Notes: generated from the letters alone by a model not told the origin. DNA of 63,962 bases from Octopus sinensis (GCF_006345805.1 NC_043018.1:1798039-1862000), one strand, 5' to 3'; positions 1,981 through 61,001 are shown, counted from the stretch's first letter. A program made the numbers and translations.

Positions 1981-2216
1981 AGAGTCAACGGCTTATGTAT
2001 AACAGACAGAGTCAACGACAATTGTAGACGTTGCCAGAAGCAACGAAAATTTTAAATAAAATGAAGTAAATGAGTGGAAATCGAACCGGTAAGTGTTTTA
2101 ATTAACAAGGCATTAAAACAATACACACACACACACACATATATCTACACATATATATATACATATGGTATATACATATATATATATATTTATTTATATA
2201 TATATGTATATATATA

Positions 2217-2619
2217 CTCTTTTACTCTTTTACTTGTTTCAGTCATTTGACTGCGGCCATGCTGGAGCACCGCCTTTAGCCGAGCAAATCGACCCCGGGA
2301 CTTATTCTTTGTAAGCCCAGTGCTTATTCTATCGGTCTCTTTTGCTGAACCGCTAAGTTACGGGGACCTAAACACACCAGCATCGGTTGTCAAGCAATGC
2401 TAGGGGGACAAACACAGATACACAAACACACACACACACATATACATATATATATACGACAGGCTTCTTTCAGTTTCCGTCTACCAAATCCACTCACAAG
2501 GCATTGGTCGGCCCAGGGCTATAGCAGAAGACACTTGCCCAAGATGCCACGCAGTGGGACTGAACCCGGAACCATGTGGTTGGTTAGCAAGCTACTTACC
2601 ACACAGGCACTCCTGCGCC
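2217..2619 (-). mobile_element. SINE family A, near full length
   Basis: tRNA-like head, CORE-like segment, internal (CA/TA)n and a CTCTTTTA tail repeat. Confidence 0.9.
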
Positions 2620-2623
2620 TATA

Positions 2624-2654
<31 letters not shown>

Positions 2655-2999: not shown

Positions 3000-3244
3000 C
3001 TTACCCACAGCCAAAACGATACATGCTCGTATACACACAGGAAACATATACACATGCACATACACATACACACACATATACATCGATATGTTTGCATGGT
3101 GAGTATACACACACTCACACACACCTATACACAGTCACGCACGCATATATGCGTGCGTGTGTATGTACTGGTATTTACATATGGATATATGTATGTTTAT
3201 ATTTACAGGTATTCATGTTTGTATATGTATATATATATGTATAT

Positions 3245-3281
<37 letters not shown>

Positions 3282-3473
3282 AGAGAGACAGGCAGAGAAG
3301 TAGCAACAGAGAAAGAAAAGAAAATGAGTAAACGCATAGCCACATGAATATATATTCATATATAGGTGTATTATATATATATTTATATATAAATATATAT
3401 ATATATATATAGGTGTGTGTGTGTGCGTATATATATATATATAAATATATGCATACGTATATATGTATATATG

Positions 3474-3504
<31 letters not shown>

Positions 3505-3625
3505 TCAGTATATATATATGTGTATATATATATATATATATATTTAATATATATATACGTGTGTGTGTGTATGTATGTTTTTATGCAGATATACATGCTT
3601 TCATATATATAAATACGTATATGTC

Positions 3626-3677
<52 letters not shown>

Positions 3678-3702
3678 TATATATATAGATATATATATAT
3701 AT

Positions 3703-3735
<33 letters not shown>
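3000..3735. repeat. Compound (CA)n/(TA)n/(GA)n microsatellites
   Basis: Direct inspection. Confidence 0.9.
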
Positions 3736-3736
<1 letters not shown>

Positions 3737-4199
3737 ACACCCCCAACACACATATTTACCCACTGAATGAAAAACATTTGCTTTAGTGTAACAGAGTTAT
3801 AATTTTCAACTATTTTAAAATAAAAGAAAGAAAGATTTTTTAAATTCAATTTTAATTCAAGAGAATTGTAAATAAAAACTATTTTTTTAAGCATCTCCAG
3901 GGGTTTTTGTTTTGTCGAAATAAATAATGTGTTTGCTTTTTATTGTTTTATTTATATTTGCTGTGAGAAAATAAACCTGAAAATATTGTCTTGCCACAAG
4001 AGAAGAGAAGAGAGTGGGAGAGATTTGATTCCGGCGAACGTTCTGAAGGTTTGGAACACAATGTGTTGAATGTGAAAAAATATTTTTCCTGAGTTTGAAT
4101 CAGAAACAACAGCTAAGTTTCTCCGCAAATCGAATTTTGTGAGTTGTGAAATTTTGAGACAAAGCGGGGGCGAATCGATTATTAAATCGCCCCAAGTAT

Positions 4200-4217
4200 T
4201 TGATGATGATGATGATT

Positions 4218-4250
<33 letters not shown>

Positions 4251-4670
4251 GTAATGTTGGAGGTGTTAGGGGTGGTGGTGGTGATGGTGGTGGTGGTGGT
4301 GGTGGTGGTGATGGTAGCGGGGATGTTGGTCGTAGTTGTGGTAATGATGATGATGATAATGATTATGATGAGGTGGTTAGATGGTACTGGTACCGATAGT
4401 GATGATGATGATGATGATGTCGATGATCGTGGTGGGTCTGGTGTTGGTGATGGTGGTGGTGGTGGTGGTGGTGGTGATGGTGGCGGTGGCGGTGGTATTG
4501 GTGGTGAGGATCATAAAGATGATGATGATGATGATGATGGTGATGTTGTTGGTAGTGTTGGTAATGGTGCTGCCGCTGCTACTGCTGCTGCTGCTGGTGA
4601 TGATGATGATGATGATGATGATGACAATGACGACGATAATGAGGATGATACGATGACGACGTCGACGGTG
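4200..4670. repeat. (GAT)n/(GGT)n/(GCT)n compound trinucleotide repeat
   Basis: Direct inspection; explains the poly-M/D/G/V ORFs. Confidence 0.95.
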
Positions 4671-5742
4671 ATTCCTGAAGTAAGAAAGGACAAATTGGCC
4701 TCTGCAGGATTTGAACTCACTTTTTAACGTACCTTCATCTTCTTACGACATTAGACTTTTTGCATCTGAAAATAACTGGATTATTTCAGTATTGTTTTCT
4801 TCGATAGTATTTGTTACAAAATCATAAAATTTGAATTTCACTTGTTTCAAAATTAGAAATTATGGAATTAGAATTTGTAAACGAAATATCAATTATGAAA
4901 TGACAATTTCTAATAAGAATGAAATGGCGTTGTATATGTTATTCGGTGTGATAAGGCATTTTAAGGTGTTTTAATGAATAAGCCAATTCTATGAAATCAA
5001 AATTTTGGCAGAATGCCAGCTATTTCGGATAAGGTGTTGAGTTGGAAACATCGACTCCAATGTTCATTTTGTACTTATTTCATTGTCCCCGAAAGGATGA
5101 ACGGGAAGCGATTTTTTTCCTACGAGACTTCTGAACCCCAGTTATGAACTCATTTGCATTCAGCCAATCAGAGCTCAACTATAAAACTAACTTATGAGCG
5201 CAAAACAAGAGATGGGCAATAAGGTTACTTGGGTAAGGAATGATCATGCTTCTTTTCTCTTTCAATAATGCTTGTTGTTCTTGTTCTTGTTCCAACCATG
5301 GCTGCCTCTGCGTAGTTATTTGTGTTGTTGTTAACTTTGTAAAACAGTAAGGGGAGAGGGTTGCTAGCACATCACCCTCTACCCACACTTTTCCCATTCA
5401 CATCTCTACCATGTGGGGCCATAACAAAATCCGATAATAGATATATATGCAAATCTATCTAATTACTCGTCGCCTTCTAAACTCTGGCATAACTTGGCGG
5501 TGATCGGTCGACTTACAACACCGTTCTTCGACTTGACCTTATTTGGTAGAGTGTGTTTGGTAAGCTCTAATTGGCTGTATGCAAATGAGTTCATTACTGG
5601 GGTCTGGAACACTTGTGGGAAAAAACAATTTCGCGAACGGAGAAGTCGGCCTCGGCGGAATTTGAATTCAGAACGTCAAGACGGACGAAATGCCAACCCT
5701 ACACCCTAATAAGTACAACATATCAAATAATGTGTTTCAAAT

Positions 5743-5951
5743 TTTAGCACAAGGCCAGCAATTTCTTGGGGGGAGGGGCTCAAGTCGATTAAATCGACCT
5801 CAATGCTCAAATGATATTTATTTTATCGACCCCGAATGGATGAAAGGTAAAGTCGATCTTGGCGAAGTTTGAACTCCGATCTGTAAAGACGGACGAAATA
5901 TCGCTAAGCCTTGTCCCCATTCTACTAACGATTCTGCCAGCTCGCCGCCTT
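5743..5951 (-). mobile_element. SINE family B (tRNA-derived, Meta-domain-like centre)
   Basis: Minus strand reads AAGGCGGCGAGCTGGCAGAATCGTTAG...GAGTTCAAACTTCGCCAAGATCGACTTTACCTTTCATCCATTCGGGGTCGATAAAATAA. The GCCTTTCATCCTTTCGGGGTCGATAA block resembles the MetaSINE central domain. A partial copy lies at about 5500-5700. Confidence 0.85.
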
Positions 5952-6216
5952 AATAAGCAAAATATATTAATAAAATGAAAAATAAGTATTAGGCTCGATC
6001 CCTTTCGACTAAACTCTTCAAGGGGAACTCTAGCATGGGCGTTGTCCAAATTCTGGAACAAGCAAAAGGGAAGAAATAATAGAACATATTTTTTTGTATT
6101 TTCCTTTTTCGTCGATGTTTAAACTTCAAACTTTTGGTCCGGCCAAGATTTATCCAGATATGACTATTTCCCTTACACGAACTAACCACCGGGGCACATC
6201 ATGAGTTGAGAAAGGG

Positions 6217-6420
6217 AGAAGGCGACGAACTGGCAGAATCATCGCCGCGCCTGGAAAAATTGCTTAGCCTTTCTTCATGTTCTGCGTATAAATTCTGCCG
6301 AGGTCGACTTTGCCTTTCGTCCTTTTGGGATCGACTAAGTAAATCCCAGTTGAACACTGGGGTCGATGAAATCGACTTACTCCCCCCTCTTGAGATTACA
6401 GGCCTTGTGCCAAACTTTAA
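6217..6420 (+). mobile_element. SINE family B
   Basis: AAGGCGACGAACTGGCAGAATC...GAGGTCGACTTTGCCTTTCGTCC...CTGGGGTCGATG. Confidence 0.8.
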
Positions 6421-7489: not shown

Positions 7490-7852
7490 TCAGTACAACC
7501 CGTGAATGATCAATTTGACAAGCATGTGCATGCATCAGGAAATAATTTACTCTAAAGATGTAGTAGTGGGATCTGATGGGTTAACTTTGACTGAGACACA
7601 GATTGGGGCCAAAATCACACGACGTCTCGAGGCCCCCTTACACCGGTGAATCACGTGTATTTTGAACACACCGCTTCTAAAAGGAGGAGTTGTTCTTCGA
7701 CGACGAAAAACAACAATGATGATATATTCACATTTGAATCTCCTAGAACGCGTTAAATAAGAATATATACGTTACTCTTTCGATTCTCGTTCTCCTGCGT
7801 GAAGTCCATGGATTATTGAAATACTTACATATTAGTTAAACAGACTGATTGA

Positions 7853-8370
7853 GTCACCAACACTGCAGCCCTCAACCACGCCAAGACACCCAGCATACTC
7901 ACTCTGCTCCAACAGAGCCGTCTGAGCTATCTCGGTCACGTATGTCGTATGCCGGACGGGATAATCCCAAAAGACTTCCTGTATGGGAATTTACCATCGG
8001 CAAAAAGGGTCACGAGGACAACCTCACCTTCGTTAGAAGGACATCTGCGGGAGAGGTATCAAGTCAATAGATCTGGACCTCTGGAGATGGAAAGAGATCG
8101 CAAATGATCGCCCCACAATGGAGACGCACTTCGCAACGGAATGGAGCGAGGGGAAGAGAAACTAGTTCTTGCCACCGAAGAAAAGCGCTCTGGAAGGAAG
8201 CAGAATTCAGTAACGACAGGAAAGAGCGTCTTCAAATGCAGCCGCGACATACAACACTGCCACTCCCGTGTGGGCCTATATGGTCGCAGTAGACGCTACA
8301 CCGCCATCAGCAGCTAACACAAAATTCTCAAGGCGTAGATCCATAGTCTTTTGAAACCGACGGATGCCTA
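7853..8370 (+). mobile_element. RTE-clade LINE, 3' fragment (degenerate)
   Basis: VTNTAALNHAKTPSILTLLQQSRLSYLGHVCRMPDGIIPKDFLYG, then a frameshift to GQPHLR*KDICGRGIKSIDLD..WKEIANDR, the RTE post-RT motif RL.WLGHV.RM.D.RIPK.LLYG. An RTE-like 3' end reads CCATAGTC...GACGGATGCCTA. Confidence 0.85.
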
Positions 8371-8569
8371 TCTATATCTATCTATAGTTAAATAACACCA
8401 AAGTATTTAAATCTTTACCACGAGACTACGAAGTCTGATGAATTTCAAAGCAGTTACATATGCTATTTGGCGCGTTCCGGTTTGTATTTGCTATATTTAC
8501 AAATCTTTCACAGCGCTCCTACAAAAAGTACTATCCATACCAACACCACCAATACTACTGCTCCTACTG

Positions 8570-8593
8570 TTACTACTACTACTACTACTACTG

Positions 8594-8625
<32 letters not shown>

Positions 8626-8626
8626 G

Positions 8627-8676
<50 letters not shown>

Positions 8677-8677
8677 G
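8570..8677. repeat. (ACT)n microsatellite
   Basis: Direct inspection. Confidence 0.95.
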
Positions 8678-9220
8678 CTTTCTGCACAAGGTCAAGGCTA
8701 AAGCACATGTGCTCCCTAGGATGGGTATCATATGATAGGGATCCTCCGATCAGTCAGCTGACGCGCAAACCCCTAAGTGGAGGTGCTTTATTGTTTAGTA
8801 TGAAAACTGTGTGATGTCATGAGCGAGATGTCCTTCTTATGTCCAGGAGTCAGCTTGCCAAGACTCTGCATATCCCTCTGTGTTCTGCTGCTGCTGCACG
8901 CATACAATCAGCCAGGCTCTTGGGAACTTTTCCTTTTGAACGGCACTTTGTAACATAATTTCTAGGTAACTAAAAAGTTTTAAACTTCGTATACTGGTAG
9001 AATGTGTTTATAAAACATCATTTTTTCTTCGCTTTATTGAGAAAATTCTATATGTTGTAAGATATTTCGTCTTTAATTTCGAGCATTTCGGCAATTTTAA
9101 CCAATCGCTGACGTCCATTTAGGTAAATAACATTCTGTGCATAATGAATATGTCCCTCCCTTAAGAAACAGATTGGGTTTACTTACATTTGTGAAGAAAA
9201 ACGATACCCTTCCCCAACCT

Positions 9221-9260
9221 CTAACCCTAACCCTAACCCTAACTCTAACCCTAAATCTAA
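9221..9260 (-). repeat. Interstitial telomere-like (CCCTAA)n in the left arm
   Basis: CTAACCCTAACCCTAACCCTAACTCTAACCCTAAATCTAA. Confidence 0.9.
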
Positions 9261-9420
9261 AATAGATTGAAATGCAATAGATCGATACTAGGGTTATAAT
9301 TATGGGTGATAATTTCATACGACACCGCTACGGAAAACGGGATTTTTTTCTAGCGGTGTCGAATGAAAATATCACCCATAATTATAATCCTAGTATCGAT
9401 CTATTGCATTTCAATCTATT

Positions 9421-9460
9421 TTAGATTTAGGGTTAGAGTTAGGGTTAGGGTTAGGGTTAG
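9421..9460 (+). repeat. Interstitial telomere-like (TTAGGG)n in the right arm
   Basis: TTAGATTTAGGGTTAGAGTTAGGGTTAGGGTTAGGGTTAG. Confidence 0.9.
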
Positions 9461-10439
9461 AGGTTGGGGAAGGGTATCGTTTTTCTTCACAAATGTATGT
9501 AAACCCAATCTGTTTCTTAAGGGAGGGACATATTCATTATGCACAGAATGTTATTTACCTAAATGGACGTCAGCGATTGGTTAAAATTGCCGAAATGCTC
9601 GAAATTAAAGACGAAATATCTTACAACATATAGAATTTTCTCAATAAAGCGAAGAAAAAATGATGTTTTATAAACACATTCTACCAGTATACGAAGTTTA
9701 AAACTTTTTAGTTACCTAGAAATTATGTTACAAAGTGCCGTTCAAAAGGAAAAGATCCGGCTCTTGTATCCAGCTCATTCGTCGACGCCACCAGTCCTCA
9801 AAAGTCTTTGACGGTCTCTTACTTGCTTCCTCTCCACACTTCCTCTCAACATGGTTTTGGGCAATGACCCATGGCGCATTGTATGAGCAAAATATGTGGA
9901 CTAGATTCTCAACAACTGATGTCTTTCGACTTTCAGCTTTGCAGCACTTTTTATTCTGTCATTCCAGATTATTCTCTCCAATCTGTGAAACATCCACAAC
10001 ACATCTTAAAGTCATCTATTTCTTTTTACATTTGCTCCGTACACTGTCTTAGTTTCTGACCCGTAGAGGATAGCTGGTATAATATAACAGTTTATTAACC
10101 TCTGTTTCTTGTGCTTTGGAAATGAAGATTTTTTTTCATTCGTATGAACGTAGTGCTTCGCCTGATTTATCCTATAAAGTGAATGCTACACAATGAATTG
10201 TCTTATGTGTTATTTGCCCTAAATACTCGAAGTCCTTTCTGTGATGCGTACTCATTATAACAGTGAGGGAGTCGGAAGGCACCAAACAGATTAGACTGTT
10301 GGAAAAGAAAAGAATCCTTACAACGGGCTACATGTTACCCCAGATGACAAGAACCCTCCTATTGGATTACAGCAAGTAACCTTACATGCCAAGATCCCTC
10401 CTAAATATCCTACCTGTCCCTAATAACACTGTTTTCTTA

Positions 10440-40064: not shown

Positions 40065-40748
40065 AAAGAAAAGAATGCATGTTCAATTTCATAGGGATGT
40101 TGGAGATAAAACAGAGAGATAAAAAAGATGGATGTGAATGACTAGATTTGATTTATAACCGGAAACGGAGGCTCTAATCCATGCTGCCCAAGAGCAAGCA
40201 CTAAGAACAAACTACCTAAAATACAGAATAGAAAACACAGCAGAAAGTGATAAGTGCAGAATCTGTGGACAAAATAGTGAAACCGTATGGCATATTACCA
40301 GCCAATGTACGTCATTAGCCCAGAAGGAATACAAGAGACGCCACGACAATATAGCAATGCTTGTCCATTGGACACTTTGCAACAAGTATGGACTTGACGG
40401 AGCAAAAAATTGGTACGACCACAAATTTGAAGGCATCGTTGAAAATAGAAATGCAAAGATCCTATGGGATTTTATGATTCAGTGCAAGCATGAGATAGAG
40501 AATAGGAAGCCGGGCATAGTCTTGAGAAAGAAAACAAACTATGCTGGATCATAGATATAGCATGCCCAGCTGACAAAAAGGTATGCGATAAGGAAGAAAG
40601 AAAAGTCGAGAGATATGACAGGTTAGCTTGGGAAGTTAAGCAGTTGTGATCGATGAAAAAGGTAGCAGTAGTACCAATAATTGTCGGAGCCCTGGGAAGA
40701 GTGAGCAAAAATCTCGAGAAGTACGTAGAACAAATAGGGGCTGCATGA
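40065..40748 (+). mobile_element. R4/Dong-like element, CCHC plus RLE region, lineage 1
   Basis: PETEALIHAAQEQALRTNYLK...CRICGQNSETVWHITSQC...RRHDNIAMLVHW...KILWDF...IIDIACPADKKVCDKEERKVERYDRL...VPIIVGALG. Confidence 0.88.
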
Positions 40749-40749
40749 T

Positions 40750-42420
40750 AGACAGTGTTACAGCTCCAGACAAAAAAGGGACCCATAAAAACCAAAGACA
40801 TCCCCGATAGAAGAGAAATATTCCACGGCGACACACTCTCTCTATTCCTTTTCTGCTTGGCATTGACACCTTTATCTAACATGCTAAACAGAACTGGATG
40901 CGGATACAGCTGTTACTGCAAAGCAATCAGCCACCTCTTATATATGGATGATATTCAACTGTACATTACAAATGTTAAAAAAAGCTGGAAGCATTACAAC
41001 AGACAGTACATCGATTTATCAAAGAAAACAAAAATGAAATTTGGCTTAGAAAAATGTACCAAAGCAACCTTGAAAAAAGAGAAAAACTAGTTAAGAGTAG
41101 CAACATCACACTAGATAAAGCAAATGAAATAGGAGAATTAGACCAAAGCCAGACATTCAAATATTTAGGAATCAATGAACTCGATACGATACAACGCAAA
41201 CAAATGAAAGGGAAAATATATAAGGAACACTAGAGACGAGTTAGATTAATACTGAAAACAGAGCTCAATACGGAAAACAAGATAATAGGCATCAACACTC
41301 TAGTGGTACCAGTAATAAGTTACAGCTACAATATTCTTAACTGGACTCTAAATGTTCTTATCAAAATAGACAAGAAAGCAAGAACAATAATGACAGGATT
41401 TAGGATGCACCTCCCAAAATCTGACATAGAAAGGTTACATATACAACGAATCGAAGGTGGTAGAGGCCTTATACAGTTAGAAACTATTACAAAATAACAA
41501 CCACATAGGATTACAGAAATACCCACTTCAGAAGCAAGGAAAGCTAATACAATTAGGCACAAAACACGAAAACAAAAAACTGCTTTCAGTCTTTAAGGAA
41601 GCTGATAAATACATATAACGTAACAACTATGAGGAAAATGAAGAAGCAAGGAAAACTGTAAAACAAATGAAATCCAAACAAAAACTGGAACAGAAATGGA
41701 TCATGATAAAACGAAGGCAAGAAAATCCCCTTCATGGCAAATATTGGGTGAAACGAAACAAAAAAGAAATAGACAAAGGAAAATTCCAAAAATGGCTGAA
41801 GAGCTCAGGACTCAAAGCAGAGACAGAAGGATTTTTAACTGCAGTACAAGACCAAAGCCTCCCCACCAGAAATTACCAAAAACATGTAATGAAAAGAAAT
41901 ATTACAAGTAACTGCAGAATATGTGGAGATGGACAAGAAACAATAAAGCATATTATCTCTGGCTGCCCAGTCCTGGCTAAGAAGTAATATATTCACAGAG
42001 ACGACAGAATTGGGACCTACATACACTGGAATCTATGCTATTACTATGGAATAACAACAGAAAAAGGAGGGTATAGGCACAAGCCATAAAAGGTCACAGA
42101 AAATGAGAAAGCAACCATACTATGGGATATGCCAATATACACAGATAGAGAAATTAAGGAAAATAGGCCAGATATAGGTGTCAGAGATCACCAAGAATGT
42201 ATTGATACATCTATTCGATGTATCAATACCAACAGATGACAAGCAATGTTTCTCAGAAAGAAACAGAAACTTTCAAAATACAAAGATCTGGAAATAGAGG
42301 TAACTCGAATGTGGAGCCTAAAACTAGACACAATTCCTATCAAAGCAGGCACATTAGGTATGATAAAAAAAAATGATTCAGACAAATACATAACAAAAAC
42401 ACTAGGACCTACAAGTATAT
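40750..42420 (+). mobile_element. R4/Dong-like element, RT domains 4-7 through RLE, lineage 2; frameshifted
   Basis: EIFHGDTLSLFLFCLALTPLS...ISHLLYMDDIQLY; MKFGLEKC; FKYLGI; HLPKSDIERLHIQRIEGGRGL; GLKAETEGFLTAVQDQSLPTRNY; CRICGDGQETIKHIISGCPVLA; KLSKYKDLEIEVTRMW. Confidence 0.92.
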
Positions 42421-46134: not shown

Positions 46135-46579
46135 GTGTATCCTTGTGTTTGTGTTTCTATTTGCTCAACCACCACCATCGTTTGATTCCGTCTCCATCAC
46201 TTAGAGATTCAGATAACAGAATGATAGAATAAGTCCCGTTCTTCAAAAACTAAACACTGGGGGTCAATTTGTTAAGGTACAGCATTTAATGTTGTGCTCC
46301 AGCATGGCCACATCGCAATAAGTGAAACAAGCAAAACTAAAAAAAAAACAATACGAGATAATTACGATTTGAATACATTTGATCAATGGTTTAGTTAACC
46401 TTTTTAGCACTGAAACCGTTCATATCAGTCTCAAATATTCCACATGTTTTGTGTGAAATCCGGCCCGATCTGGCCTCTCACACCTACCCTACAATGTCAT
46501 TCTACAAAAGAAGGGGATCACATGATCGAAATCTTGAAGCTATGAGATAATGCGGGCTTCGTTCTAATAATAGATATTA

Positions 46580-47050
46580 TGTGAGGTATACTAGCCATCT
46601 CAATATGGCTAACCACTAAGGGTGGGTGTTATTGTAGCTTGTAGCCCCAGAAGAACATCGTCTCCAGCTGGCTTTAGGCACAATTTCTGTGCCCTTATGT
46701 TCTCCTGGGGCTACAAACTACAGTAACACCCACCCTTAGTGACCTCCCTTAGTGACCTCCCTTATGGTATTTGCAAAGGGAGGTCACTAAGGGTGGGTGT
46801 TACTGTAGCTTGTAGCCCCAGGAGAACATAAGGGCACAGAAATTGTGCCTAAAGCCAGCTGGAGACGATGTTCTCCTGGGGCTACAAGCTACAGTAACAC
46901 CCACCCTTAGTGACCTCCCTTTGCAAATACCATAAGGGCACAGAAATTGTGCCTAAAGCCAGCTGGAGACGTTGTTCTCCTGGGGCTACAAGCTACAGTA
47001 ATACCAACCCTTAGTGGTTAGCCATATTGAGATGGCAAGTATACCTCACA
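46580..47050. mobile_element. TIR-bounded element built of nested inverted and direct modules (MITE/foldback-like)
   Basis: Ends TGTGAGGTATACTAGCCATCTCAATATGGCTAACCACTAAGG and CCTTAGTGGTTAGCCATATTGAGATGGCAAGTATACCTCACA. A 42-bp module occurs 5 times in both orientations, and a related end fragment lies at 57105-57180. Confidence 0.8.
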
Positions 47051-47379
47051 TTGTCGTGCAGTTACTGTTTATACCTCGTTCAGAGATTTATTATTGCTAA
47101 TAAATATTATGTTTGACAGAATAATCAGAAACTCCAAAGGCTAATCAGGGACGAGAATTGACTGCAAGAATCGCAGAAAGAGTGAAAAAAAAATTTTAAA
47201 AAAGAAAGCAATAGTTGCAACGTTTTCGCCATTGTTTATTAGGAATGAGCTGCTGTTGCAATGGATGCGCTGTTGGTCGGATGCTGTGATGTGATTTCAC
47301 GATCGATGTTGTGCTTGCTTCTATCTATGTTGTAAAGAAAGAGCAAAACTAAAACAATAGCATCAGCGACGATTATAAC

Positions 47380-52571: not shown

Positions 52572-52795
52572 GGAAGGCGACGAGCTGGCAGAATCGTTAG
52601 CACGCTGGGCGAAATATTTACCGGTATTTCGTCTGTTTTTACGTTCAGAGTTCAAATTCCGCCGAGGTCGACTTTGCCTTTCATCCTTTCGGGGTCGATA
52701 AATTAAGTAGCAGTTGCGTAATGGTATCGATCTAATCGACTGCCCCCCCCCCCATCCACAAAATTTCAGGCTTTGTGCCTAGAGTAGAAAAGAAT
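52572..52795 (+). mobile_element. SINE family B, full length
   Basis: AAGGCGACGAGCTGGCAGAATCGTTAGCACG...GCCTTTCATCCTTTCGGGGTCGATAAATTAAG. Confidence 0.9.
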
Positions 52796-54963: not shown

Positions 54964-56226
54964 CAGGTGTTGGACAAAATAATGGAAAAATCTAAAAATT
55001 TCTAACGAATTTATTTTAATATGAGGTAAGACCACTTTTGGTAGTATTTACATCTTGACTTATACGGGGTATGGACTCGTACAAAGTTTGAATTGCTTCC
55101 AAAGGAATTTTTGTCCATTCTTCAGCTAAAACAGTATCCACTTCTTGTAGTGATGATGGTGGGGGATATTGACTCCTTACTTGTTTTTCTAAAATGCCCC
55201 ATAAATGTTCAATGATATTGAGATCTGGGGACTGTGGTGGCCAGATAAGATGTTCAACTTCACCAGAATGTTCCTCGTGCCATTCTGTAACATCTTTAAC
55301 TGTTTGAATTGGTGAATTATTACCCTGAAAGATTGCGTTTCCCTCCGGAAACAGTTTCGCAGCTATAGAATGAATTTGATCAGATAAAACGCTTAAATAG
55401 GCTTGACTATTAATTCTACCATGAAGGGAAACCATTGGGCTGGCGGACTTCCAAGATATAGCCCCCAGCTCATCACAGATCCCCCGTTATGTATAACAGT
55501 TGGAAGAAGTTAGTCTGGGCCAACTACTTCTTTTGGCTGTCTCCACACGTATACTCAGCCGGTGGCTGGAAATAACGTAAAGAATGACTCGTCTGAGAAA
55601 ATAACATTCTTTCACTGTTCTAGGGACCAATTCGGTAGGTTTTTACTCCACTCTGAACGGTTTGCAACGTTTGTTTTTGAAAGTAGGGGTTTTCTGATTG
55701 CAGCCCTCCCGTGAATTCTGGCTTTTTGCCTCGCCCGGCGAACACTTTTTGAAGAAACTTGATTCTCGAGATGGTCATTAAGCTCTGCAGTAATTTTGGG
55801 AGCTGTACTTTTCTTATCCTTTCTAACAATTCTTGTAGGAGTCCAACGGTCTGTATCTTAAAGTATTGGTTTACTTCTGGAACTTTGTTTCGATAAGGAG
55901 GTTTTTACCTCTTTCTCAAAGGCTGTCATTACTTTCGAGACAATACTTCTTGAAACACCAAACATTTCGACCTTTTACATTATGCTAGCGCCTGCCATAC
56001 GAACACCAACAATTTGACCTCTTTGAAAGTCCGATAGATCTATCAGTTTAATTACCTTTTTCTGATGATATCTGAAAAGAAACAGCAATTTTAGCAAAAC
56101 ATATTAAGCAACACTAATAAAAAATTAAAACACATAAAATTAAACAAGCTTTTGACGGTTTTGATACATATTTCAAAATTATGATGCTATGATGCTAGGT
56201 GTTTCCATTATTTTGTCCAACCCCTG
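54964..56226 (-). mobile_element. Full-length Tc1-type DNA transposon (1263 bp, 25-bp TIRs, TA TSD), DD36E spacing (Incomer-like)
   Basis: TA|CAGGTGTTGGACAAAATAATGGAAA ... TTTCCATTATTTTGTCCAACCCCTG|TA, with 1 mismatch between TIRs. Confidence 0.92.
55016..56046 (-). pseudogene. Tc1-family transposase pseudogene
   Basis: N-terminal DLSDFQRGQIVGVRMAGAS..GVSRSIVSKVMTAF; VIFSDESFF (first D at about 55591); IFQGNNSPI (second D mutated); WPPQSPDLNIIEHLW. Several stops and frameshifts. Confidence 0.9.
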
Positions 56227-60542: not shown

Positions 60543-60694
60543 ACTAACACATATATATATGTATCTATATATGTACATATATACAATATATGTATGCATA
60601 TGTTTGTATATATATACATATATACACATACGATCGATACATACATATATATATGGTCACATATATATCTATAAATATGTGTGTGCATCTATGC

Positions 60695-60890
60695 TCTCTT
60701 TTACTCTTTTGCTTGTTTCAGTCATTTGACTGTGGCCATGCTGGACCACCGCCTTTAGTCGAGCAAATCGACCCCAGGTCTTATTCTTTGTAAGCCTAGT
60801 ACTTATTATATCAGTCTCTCTTGCCGAACAGCTATGTAACGGGGACGTAAATAAACCAGCATCGGTTGTCAAGCGATGTTGGGGGGACAA
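60695..60890 (-). mobile_element. SINE family A, 3' half (5' piece on + strand at about 60270-60380)
   Basis: CTCTTTTACTCTTTTGCTTGTTTCAGTCATTTGACTG...GGGGGGACAAA. Confidence 0.85.
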
Positions 60891-61001
60891 ATTGGTACCA
60901 CATTTCCGTGTTTGTGACCCTATGCTTTTTGTTTTGCTGTTGTTGTTACCGCAGCCAGTGCTGTTCGCACTGCCGGAAGAGTCGCTAGTGTCGCTGTTGT
61001 T

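What the first reader, a model, noticed from the sequence alone, without database searches (positions are those of the whole stretch)
8915..9766. 836-bp foldback element with 8-bp TSD, almost entirely palindromic
Seen: two 408-bp arms about 99% complementary around a 20-bp spacer, with a perfect 8-bp direct repeat GGCTCTTG outside, termini GGAAC/GGATC and no coding capacity. Established: 8-9-bp TSDs with GG-starting TIRs are typical of Merlin (GGNRM termini) and MULE elements, whereas hAT and P TIRs usually start with CA or TA. Inference: a young non-autonomous foldback element. It would extrude a cruciform and, if transcribed, form about 400 bp of dsRNA, a candidate ADAR or siRNA substrate in a lineage known for heavy A-to-I editing.
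Basis: partly seen in the sequence, partly recalled or inferred. Interest (0 to 1): 0.8.

Follow-up and report, generated by a model that had tools for sequence, protein, structure and literature searches.

The report
Octopus Merlin-type foldback transposon copy
This is one copy of a small non-coding "foldback" jumping gene in an octopus genome, most likely moved by a Merlin-type transposase; it is a real and fairly recent insertion, but an ordinary kind of repeat.

Summary
Window 8923-9758 is an 836-bp near-perfect palindrome: two 415-nt arms with 8 mismatches (98.1%) around a 6-nt loop. It is flanked by a perfect 8-bp direct repeat, GGCTCTTG.

The window is Octopus DNA; its SINEs are 90-97% identical to O. 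sinensis and O. vulgaris loci.

A diverged relative lies in O. bimaculoides (L005 5575-6284). It has the same foldback layout and the same GGATCTTT termini, and its own perfect 8-bp TSD, TAACGTTG. So this is a transposon family, not an assembly artefact.

The shared terminal and subterminal block also sits 546 bp downstream of a Merlin (DDE_Tnp_IS1595) transposase gene on that contig, oriented as a 3' end. Four other GG-terminated Octopus elements have perfect 8-bp TSDs: three 8.7-9.05-kb Merlin copies and a 3.1-kb foldback carrying Merlin coding fragments.

Best reading: a non-autonomous Merlin-superfamily foldback MITE, mobilised in trans. No autonomous element with both matching ends was found, so the Merlin assignment is strong but indirect.

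The cruciform, dsRNA and ADAR ideas remain untested. The RNA fold is -703 kcal/mol in silico, but there is no evidence of transcription.

Verdict: a new member of a known kind, of low to moderate interest.

The parts
8915..8922 (.). Left target-site duplication, GGCTCTTG
   Evidence: Identical 8-mer at 9759-9766, directly abutting the arms.
8923..9337 (+). Left arm of the foldback (415 nt), terminus GGAACTTTTCCTTTTGAACGG
   Evidence: 98% complementary to 9344-9758, with 8 mismatches. The outer 200 nt or so are homologous to both arms of the O. bimaculoides foldback at L005 5575-6284.
9338..9343 (.). Central loop CGGGAT. The adjoining 45 nt or so of each arm hold 6 of the 8 arm mismatches.
9344..9758 (-). 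Right arm of the foldback (415 nt), terminus (reverse complement) GGATCTTTTCCTTTTGAACGG. This is the family-typical GGATC end.
   Evidence: GGATCTTT is also the terminus of both ends of the L005 foldback and of the block downstream of the L005 Merlin gene.
9759..9766 (.). Right target-site duplication, GGCTCTTG
8963..9022 (+). Subterminal conserved block (...TAAACTTCGTATACTGGTAGAATGTG...), mirrored at 9659-9718. It is a candidate transposase-binding region.
   Evidence: 68-80% identical to the O. bimaculoides foldback arms in 20-nt windows. The core, CGAAGTTTGAAAGT with at most 2 mismatches, also occurs in the block at L005 4505-4602 downstream of the Merlin gene.
9083..9122 (+). The best-conserved internal block, ATTTCGGCAATTTTAACCAATCGCTGACGTCCATT (a CCAAT-box plus a CRE-like TGACGTC), mirrored at 9559-9598.
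   Evidence: 82-85% identical between the window copy and both O. bimaculoides arms, while its neighbours fall to 35-45%. Its function is inferred only.
9212..9254 (+). Degenerate telomere-like hexamer array, about 7 units of CCCTAA, mirrored as TTAGGG at 9427-9469.
   Evidence: TRF rows. Similar arrays lie in the centre of the L005 foldback and of another inverted-repeat element at L004 7140-7610.

Best explanation
Window 8923-9758 is a single, fairly recent insertion of a non-autonomous foldback DNA transposon, a long-TIR MITE of the Merlin superfamily, in an Octopus genome.

It encodes nothing. It consists of one transposon end duplicated in inverted orientation: a terminal GGATCTTT motif, a subterminal conserved block, an internal CCAAT/CRE-like block and a telomere-like hexamer array.

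Inferred mechanism: a Merlin (DDE_Tnp_IS1595) transposase made elsewhere in the genome binds the identical terminal and subterminal sequences of the two arms and excises the element. It reinserts it through an 8-bp staggered cut, and repair of that cut produced the flanking GGCTCTTG duplication.

The foldback form probably arose from an autonomous or internally deleted Merlin by strand switching during gap repair, or by a similar end duplication. This is inference.

At this locus it has no demonstrated function. As DNA it can extrude a hairpin or cruciform. If transcribed, it would form about 410 bp of near-perfect dsRNA.
For: Shown:
- The palindrome and the perfect 8-bp TSD.
- No coding capacity and no known RNA family.
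- The window is Octopus: its SINE copies are 90-97% identical to O. sinensis GCA_006345805.1 and O. vulgaris GCA_951406725.2 loci.
- A second family member in O. bimaculoides, L005 5575-6284 (710 bp). It is colinear with our element over the outer 215-240 bp or so of both arms, with 73% identity over 164 bp (E = 2e-21). Both ends are GGATCTTTGGGGTTTGACGG, and it has its own perfect 8-bp TSD, TAACGTTG.
- On the same 8-kb contig, a Merlin transposase gene (P0057, PF12762, 3223-4056) is followed 546 bp downstream by a block at 4505-4602. The block ends ...AAAAAAGATCC, is in 3'-end orientation, and is 88% identical over 59 nt to the L005 foldback arm. It shares the terminus and the CGAAGTTTGAAAG core with our arms.
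- A chain of homology. L005 4469-4501, which abuts that block, and a 52-bp piece of the P0057-like coding sequence both occur in each arm of a separate 3112-bp foldback in O. sinensis (L001 161-3272). That foldback has GG termini and a perfect 8-bp TSD, AAAAAAAT.
- Three 99%-identical Merlin copies of 8.7-9.05 kb in O. sinensis and O. vulgaris have GGCGATG.../GGCATAG... termini, TIRs of about 355 bp and perfect 8-bp TSDs.

Literature:
- Merlin is defined by TIRs of 24-462 bp, a conserved 5'-GG and 8-9-bp TSDs, and O. bimaculoides is unusually rich in Merlin, with 191 hits (PMC8101967).
- Among molluscs, Merlin is almost restricted to cephalopods (PMC10294476).
Against: - No autonomous element with both matching ends was recovered. 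The L005 Merlin copy has no matching left end upstream of the gene.
- Its homology to the O. sinensis paralogue in L004 stops at 4232, and microsatellites separate that point from the terminal block. The link between gene and terminus therefore rests on proximity, orientation and the L001 chain.
- Only two family members were seen, in different species and about 27% diverged. Copy number, the range of TSD lengths and the partner in the window's own species are unknown.
- The termini differ from the block at the Merlin 3' end at 2 of the first 11 positions (GGATCTTTTCC against GGATCTTTTTT). That fails Repbase's rule of thumb of 11 positions with at most 1 mismatch (PMC4455052).
- Zisupton and Novosib, also cephalopod-enriched (PMC10294476) and with 8-bp TSDs by my recollection, could not be excluded by their terminal sequences.
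Confidence: 0.75

Rival explanations
1. It is a foldback or MITE derivative of another DNA-transposon superfamily that makes 8-bp TSDs (hAT, P/Galileo-like, MULE/Foldback, Zisupton or Novosib), and its nearness to a Merlin gene in L005 is a coincidence.
For: The 8-bp TSD is shared by several superfamilies. Zisupton and Novosib are reported as cephalopod-enriched (PMC10294476). The link between the Merlin gene and the terminal block in L005 is not closed by a matching left end.
Against: The GG termini do not fit the YARNG start of hAT or the CA start of P elements (established knowledge). Neither TSD (GGCTCTTG, TAACGTTG) fits the hAT nTnnnnAn preference. MULE and FB elements typically give 9-10 bp, whereas all six GG-terminated Octopus insertions examined here have exactly 8 bp. 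Three of them carry a Merlin gene and one carries Merlin coding fragments. Two separate relatives of the element lie within 2.3 kb of a Merlin gene on one 8-kb contig. None was found in about 83 kb of the other Octopus loci, and only the query copy is present in the 64-kb window.
Confidence: 0.12
2. It is an assembly artefact: a chimeric or fold-back long read, or a mis-join, created a palindrome that is not in the genome.
For: Near-perfect palindromes are a known failure mode of long-read libraries. No reads are available here to check.
Against: An artefactual fold-back would not be embedded in colinear unique flanks with a perfect 8-bp TSD on both sides. A homologous element with the same architecture, the same termini and its own 8-bp TSD exists in an independent assembly of another species.
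Confidence: 0.02
3. It is an exapted hairpin-RNA locus (a source of endo-siRNA or piRNA, or an ADAR 'sponge'), kept nearly perfect by selection or gene conversion rather than by youth.
For: The predicted hairpin is extremely stable: -702.8 kcal/mol, z = -79. A CCAAT/CRE-like block is conserved at 82-85% between species while its surroundings decay. Metazoan A-to-I editing mainly targets dsRNA formed from young repeats, O. bimaculoides included (PMC9989829).
Against: There is no evidence of transcription. There is no Rfam match. The O. bimaculoides relative has let its arms decay to about 71%. The conserved blocks are explained equally well as transposase-binding or promoter sites of the parent transposon. 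A single-copy insertion with an intact TSD looks like a neutral young insertion.
Confidence: 0.04
4. It is a non-transposon inverted duplication, for example from replication template switching or break-induced fold-back repair, and the flanking 8-mer repeat is chance or microhomology.
For: Palindromes can arise from fold-back priming at breaks. The mismatches cluster at the centre, as expected around a hairpin tip.
Against: Such events do not produce a direct repeat on both outer sides. The arms are homologous to an independently inserted element elsewhere, which has a different 8-bp TSD. The termini are conserved across species.
Confidence: 0.02

Closest known systems
Merlin superfamily non-autonomous elements (MITEs), as defined by Feschotte 2004 and summarised in PMC8101967
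   Same: 5'-GG termini, an 8-bp TSD, and a TIR length (415 nt) inside the reported 24-462-bp range. The element is non-coding. The host genus is known to be Merlin-rich. The terminal and subterminal block is shared with sequence next to a DDE_Tnp_IS1595 gene.
   Different: Almost the whole element is TIR, with a 6-nt loop, so it is a true foldback rather than short TIRs around an internal region. It carries telomere-like hexamer arrays. No partner with both ends has been identified.
The 8.7-9.05-kb Merlin family of O. sinensis and O. vulgaris found here (L001 4266-12986, L002 3888-12938, L003 4253-12988; transposase P0130)
   Same: Same genus, GG termini, perfect 8-bp TSDs and long TIRs of about 355 bp.
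   Different: No sequence similarity to our element. Its termini are GGCGATG/GGCATAG, not GGATCTT. It is autonomous and very large for a Merlin.
Drosophila Foldback (FB) elements and Arabidopsis FARE (MULE-related foldbacks)
   Same: Long inverted arms make up most of the element, there is little or no coding capacity, and a hairpin or cruciform can form.
   Different: By my knowledge, FB and FARE give 9-bp TSDs and have arms built from tandem subrepeats. Our arms are unique sequence apart from one hexamer array, and the TSD is 8 bp. The 3.1-kb foldback at L001 161-3272 resembles FB more closely in having subrepeats of about 120 bp, yet it too has GG termini and an 8-bp TSD.
Galileo, Kepler and Newton (foldback-like members of the P superfamily, Drosophila; PMC4168063)
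   Same: A cut-and-paste family in which very long TIRs give foldback-like non-autonomous copies.
   Different: A different superfamily. By my knowledge it has 7-bp TSDs and CA-type termini.

Membership tests
Merlin superfamily (DNA/TIR) | Target-site duplication of 8 or 9 bp | tested here: met
   Perfect 8-bp GGCTCTTG at 8915-8922 and 9759-9766. The relative in L005 has a perfect 8-bp TAACGTTG. Criterion taken from PMC8101967.
Merlin superfamily (DNA/TIR) | TIRs begin with a conserved 5'-GG | tested here: met
   GGAAC and GGATC here. GGATC is at both ends of the L005 foldback and at the end of the block by the L005 Merlin gene. Criterion from PMC8101967.
Merlin superfamily (DNA/TIR) | TIR length within the described range (24-462 bp) | tested here: met
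   The arms are 415 nt. The intact Octopus Merlins found here have TIRs of about 355 bp.
Merlin superfamily (DNA/TIR) | Encodes a DDE_Tnp_IS1595 transposase, or shares its termini with an autonomous element that does | tested here: inconclusive
   The element itself is non-coding. A homologous terminal block lies 546 bp downstream of a PF12762 gene in L005, and a chain of homology through the L001 foldback ties it to Merlin coding sequence. No complete element with both ends was found.
Merlin superfamily (DNA/TIR) | Repbase rule for non-autonomous elements: same TSD length, and termini aligned over positions 1-11 with at most 1 mismatch to a classified element (PMC4455052) | tested here: not met
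   GGATCTTTTCC against GGATCTTTTTT (L005 Merlin-adjacent end) gives 2 mismatches. Against the L005 foldback, GGATCTTTGGG gives 3. This is a rule of thumb for annotation, and it was applied across species at about 27% divergence.
MITE / foldback non-autonomous element (structural class) | Short, non-coding, with terminal inverted repeats and a TSD, and present as a family of dispersed copies | tested here: met
   836 bp with no real ORF, plus TIRs and a TSD. A second, independently inserted copy was found in another species. Copy number in the window's own genome was not measurable.
hAT superfamily | 8-bp TSD with an nTnnnnAn preference, and TIRs starting YARNG (CA/TA) | tested here: not met
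   The TSD length fits, but the termini are GG... Both TSDs (GGCTCTTG, TAACGTTG) have G or A at position 2 and T at position 7. The consensus is from my own knowledge.
MULE / Drosophila FB-type foldback | TSD typically 9-10 bp, and FB arms composed of tandem subrepeats | tested here: not met
   The TSD is exactly 8 bp in both family copies. The arms have no tandem subrepeats apart from a 43-bp hexamer array. The typical values are from my own knowledge.
Zisupton / Novosib | 8-bp TSD plus superfamily-specific termini and transposase | not tested
   The TSD length is compatible. Both are reported in cephalopods (PMC10294476).

The most novel reading that the evidence does not exclude
Octopus Merlin foldbacks may not be inert. 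Each arm keeps an inward-facing CCAAT/CRE-like promoter module, conserved at 82-85% between species while the rest of the arm decays. Copies would then drive their own convergent or hairpin transcription and act as dispersed, self-promoted sources of long dsRNA. That dsRNA could feed, or titrate, the exceptionally active cephalopod ADAR system or an siRNA/piRNA pathway. The recurrent telomere-like arrays at foldback centres would be part of that biology, for example by stabilising the hairpin tip or recruiting proteins.
Probability: 0.05. Interest if true: 0.7.

Novelty: new member of a known kind. Interest (0 to 1): 0.25.

Why it matters
The main value is for annotation. It adds a concrete foldback family to the unusually large Merlin complement of octopus genomes, with defined ends (GGATCTTT..., 8-bp TSD).

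It also shows that Merlin, like P/Galileo and MULE/FB, generates long-arm foldback derivatives. Two unrelated examples were seen in about 150 kb of Octopus DNA.

Young, near-perfect 400-bp palindromes matter in practice. They are fragile sites and sources of rearrangement. They are hard to assemble and to amplify. When they lie in transcribed regions, they are exactly the kind of young-repeat dsRNA that dominates metazoan A-to-I hyper-editing (PMC9989829). In a lineage studied for RNA editing, a catalogue of such elements would help separate repeat-driven hyper-editing from site-selective recoding.

Nothing here suggests a new mechanism.

Tried and rejected
- Looked for other copies in the window with blastn (word size 7) and a terminus search allowing 3 mismatches. 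Only the element itself was found.
- Tried to find other copies through spurious ORF calls. Exact look-ups of the 73-aa internal ORF, the 105-aa ORF spanning the right junction and the Tc1 ORF found nothing on record. A homology search with the 73-aa ORF gave no hits.
- Scanned JGI metagenome contigs and GTDB genome contigs for the exact 28-mer terminus: 0 hits. A second metagenome scan, with the conserved CCAAT/CRE 21-mer, gave one contig (L010). It matches only that motif, at or below chance expectation by my rough estimate, and is not a copy.
- Rfam at permissive threshold over 7500-11500, and ARAGORN over the whole window: nothing.
- Tried to identify the organism from the Tc1/mariner fragment. 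The hits were uninformative amphipod, spider and metagenome sequences. The organism was settled instead from SINE identity to Octopus loci.
- Searched for a paralogous or orthologous empty site. The flanks are unique in the window and absent from all fetched Octopus loci.
- Searched for the left end of the L005 Merlin: none found. The O. sinensis paralogue in L004 shares only 3215-4232 and has no ends.
- Fetched Logan and ENA contigs encoding related Merlin transposases (L006-L009). They are not Octopus and have no matching termini.
- Considered the internal GGATCTTTTCC at L005 5792 as the terminus of a nested element. No partner end exists, and it aligns with diverged arm sequence, so I left it as a probable coincidence.
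- Literature searches for cephalopod foldback elements found no prior description.

Full report
**Observation.**
The repeat finder gives arms at 8923-9337 and 9344-9758, 415 nt each, 98% complementary, separated by 6 nt.

A base-by-base comparison finds 8 mismatches, at positions 4, 261, 371, 390, 397 and 409-411 from the terminus. Six of them fall in the innermost 45 nt.

The 8-mer GGCTCTTG abuts the arms on both sides (8915-8922 and 9759-9766) and the repeat does not extend further. The termini read GGAAC... on the left and GGATC... on the right (reverse complement).

The 21-nt terminus occurs only at the two ends of the element, against 0 expected in shuffles. A blastn search with word size 7 finds no other copy or fragment in the 64-kb window.

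Nothing suggests the element encodes anything:
- The longest internal ORF is 73 aa, with no Pfam hit.
- That ORF has no homologue among 5.8 billion proteins.
- There is no Rfam match even at E = 1.
- There is no tRNA-like sequence.

Each arm also carries about seven degenerate telomere-type hexamers, CCCTAA at 9212-9254 and TTAGGG at 9427-9469.

**Context and organism.**
The window is AT-rich at about 37% G+C and saturated with microsatellites, with more than 150 TRF rows. It is full of transposon debris:
- a Tc1/mariner DDE_3 fragment at 55019-55486 (-);
- LINE reverse-transcriptase fragments at 40159-41984;
- several SINE-like families repeated through the window.

The element sits between a LINE-like 3' end with a (TAC)41 tail (7853-8676) and unique sequence. 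The flanks are not repeated in the window.

SINE copies in the window are 90-97% identical to copies in loci from O. sinensis (GCA_006345805.1) and O. vulgaris (GCA_951406725.2).

**Finding relatives.**
No eukaryotic DNA database was available, and the direct routes failed.

The literature gave a way in. Merlin elements are defined by TIRs of 24-462 bp, a conserved 5'-GG and 8-9-bp TSDs. O. bimaculoides is unusually rich in them, with 191 protein hits (PMC8101967). Among molluscs, Merlin, Zisupton and Novosib are almost confined to cephalopods (PMC10294476).

I took an O. bimaculoides Merlin protein from that paper's supplement (KOF79200.1) and used it as a query. This recovered Octopus Merlin proteins present in the assembly collection. 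I then fetched their loci, L001 to L005.

**A second family member.**
Blasting the element against those loci hit only L005, an 8-kb O. bimaculoides contig.

L005 5575-6284 is a 710-bp foldback that is colinear with our element over the outer 215-240 bp or so of both arms. Identity is 73% over 164 bp, E = 2e-21. Both of its ends read GGATCTTTGGGGTTTGACGG. It has telomere-like arrays at its centre. It also has its own perfect 8-bp TSD, TAACGTTG, at 5567-5574 and 6285-6292.

Together with the TSD in the window, it disposes of the assembly-artefact reading, because the architecture recurs in an independent assembly of another species. It also shows that GGATC is the ancestral terminus and that the left GGAAC is a private change in the window copy.

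**Link to Merlin.**
L005 was fetched because it encodes a Merlin transposase (P0057, PF12762, 3223-4056). At 546 bp downstream of its stop codon, in the orientation expected for a 3' end, lies a block at 4505-4602. It reads ...TATACGAAGTTTGAAAGTCTTTCGGTACC...AAAAAAGATCC.

This block is 88% identical over 59 nt to the arm of the L005 foldback. It shares the terminus and the CGAAGTTTGAAAG core with the window's arms.

The link is not closed:
- No matching left end lies upstream of the gene.
- Homology to the O. sinensis paralogue in L004 (82% amino-acid identity) stops at 4232.
- Microsatellites separate that point from the terminal block.

A chain of homology supports the link independently. 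L005 4469-4501 directly abuts the terminal block. It occurs at 94% identity in each arm of a separate foldback in O. sinensis, L001 161-3272. Those arms also contain a 52-bp piece of P0057-like coding sequence at 84.6% identity. That 3112-bp foldback has GGTAAAATTACAG termini, arms of about 950 bp at 95.5% identity, and a perfect 8-bp TSD, AAAAAAAT.

**What intact Octopus Merlins look like.**
Three copies of an 8.7-9.05-kb element carry the P0130 transposase: L001 4266-12986, L002 3888-12938 and L003 4253-12988. They are more than 99% identical to one another. They have TIRs of about 355 bp and termini GGCGATGTTTCG / GGCATAGTTTCG. Their TSDs are perfect 8-mers: GCAAATCT, GAAACTTT and CAAGGCTT.

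So all six GG-terminated insertions examined in this genus have exactly 8-bp TSDs. Four of them carry Merlin coding sequence. The window element shows no sequence similarity to this large family and so belongs to a different Merlin lineage.

**Anatomy and likely mechanism.**
I aligned the four arms (two species, two arms each) together with the Merlin-adjacent end. Three blocks are conserved:
- the terminal 20 nt (8923-8942);
- a subterminal block (8963-9022, 68-80% identity);
- an internal block (9083-9122, 82-85% identity) that reads as a CCAAT box next to a CRE-like TGACGTC.

The inner 200 nt or so are not conserved, apart from the presence of hexamer arrays. Those arrays are in opposite orientation in the two copies, so they are probably independent or fast-evolving.

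My reading is as follows. The first two blocks are the sites recognised by the transposase. The third may be a remnant of the parent element's promoter region. This is inference.

The element is mobilised in trans by cut-and-paste with an 8-bp staggered target cut. The TSD is shown; the mechanism is inferred from what is established for DDE transposases. Its foldback form arose by duplication of one end in inverted orientation during repair, which is also inference.

The 98% arm identity and the intact TSD indicate a fairly recent insertion. The clustering of mismatches at the centre means that some of the divergence may predate insertion, so I give no date.

**Functional speculation.**
As RNA the element folds into a single hairpin of about 410 bp. 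The predicted energy is -702.8 kcal/mol, against a shuffle mean of -171, giving z = -79.

Metazoan A-to-I editing, O. bimaculoides included, mainly targets dsRNA formed by young repeats (PMC9989829). I have no evidence on whether this locus is transcribed, edited or processed into small RNAs.

**Comparison and novelty.**
It works like a Merlin MITE and meets the testable structural criteria: GG termini, an 8-bp TSD and a TIR length in range. The defining feature, a transposase partner with the same termini, is only indirectly supported.

Repbase's rule of 11 positions with at most 1 mismatch (PMC4455052) is missed by one position against the only Merlin-adjacent end available. That end comes from another species.

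It does not fit the other candidates:
- hAT or P, because of the termini;
- FB or MULE, because of the TSD length and the lack of subrepeats in the arms.

Zisupton and Novosib could not be tested. Literature searches found no description of cephalopod or Merlin foldbacks. Automated repeat libraries may still contain this family unnamed.

I rate it a new member of a known kind. It is useful for annotation and for editing studies, but not surprising.

**Scores.**
- Probability that it is a real foldback transposon insertion: about 0.93.
- Probability that it belongs to Merlin specifically: about 0.75.
- Interest: 0.25.

Noticed in passing
window 46579-47051: A second palindromic, inverted-repeat element. 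Arms 46614-46750 and 46776-46912 are 137 nt at 98% with a 25-nt spacer. They are nested in outer arms 46579-46699 and 46931-47051 (95%), with a 104-bp tandem unit. The termini read TGTGAGGTATACTAGCC..., and I saw no obvious TSD. It is unrelated in sequence to the finding.
   Followed up: partly
L001 161-3272 (O. sinensis CM016860.1): A 3112-bp foldback with arms of about 950 bp (95.5%) whose outer parts are tandem subrepeats of about 120 bp. It has GGTAAAATTACAG termini and a perfect 8-bp TSD, AAAAAAAT. Each arm carries a 52-bp fragment of Merlin transposase coding sequence. This is a second, independent Merlin-derived foldback family.
   Followed up: partly
L001 4266-12986, L003 4253-12988 (O. 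sinensis), L002 3888-12938 (O. vulgaris): A recently active Merlin family that is unusually large, 8.7-9.05 kb against the roughly 1.6 kb typical of mollusc Merlins (PMC10294476). The copies are more than 99% identical. They have TIRs of about 355 bp, an internal 344-bp inverted repeat and perfect 8-bp TSDs. Only the 305-aa transposase gene is annotated, so what fills the other 7 kb or so is unknown. A solo copy of its TIR (about 90% identity) interrupts the Merlin gene remnant at L004 10855-11242.
   Followed up: partly
window 9212-9254 and 9427-9469; L005 5886-6020; L004 7392-7487: Degenerate TTAGGG/CCCTAA arrays sit at or near the centre of three different inverted-repeat elements in three Octopus loci. 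They are in opposite orientation relative to the termini in the two homologous foldbacks. I have no explanation for why telomere-like hexamers recur inside these elements.
   Followed up: no
L005 5792-5802: An internal GGATCTTTTCC matches the window element's terminus at 11 of 11 positions. It lies at the inner edge of the left arm of the O. bimaculoides foldback and has no partner end. It is probably chance or a relic of a nested or rearranged copy.
   Followed up: partly
window 10436-10800, with about 12 further copies (for example 5776-5956, 13417-13595, 35466-35703, 52574-52741): A SINE-like unit of about 180 bp, here as a tandem dimer at 87% identity. It is dispersed through the window and present in O. 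sinensis loci at 85-91% identity.
   Followed up: no
window 2195-2627, 11182-11601, 35916-36280, 494-722, 60694-60891: A SINE-like family of about 415 bp, 88-97% identical to copies in O. sinensis and O. vulgaris loci. This was the evidence used to assign the window to Octopus.
   Followed up: partly
window 55019-55904 (-) and 40159-41984 (+): A decayed Tc1/mariner transposase (DDE_3, E = 9e-11; best relatives 70-75% identical in metagenome, amphipod and spider data) and LINE fragments (RVT_1, zf-RVT).
   Followed up: partly
window 7853-8676: A LINE-like 3' coding end (...LSYLGHVCRMPDGIIPKDFLYG...) followed by a (TAC)41 microsatellite tail, about 240 bp upstream of the foldback insertion site.
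   Followed up: no
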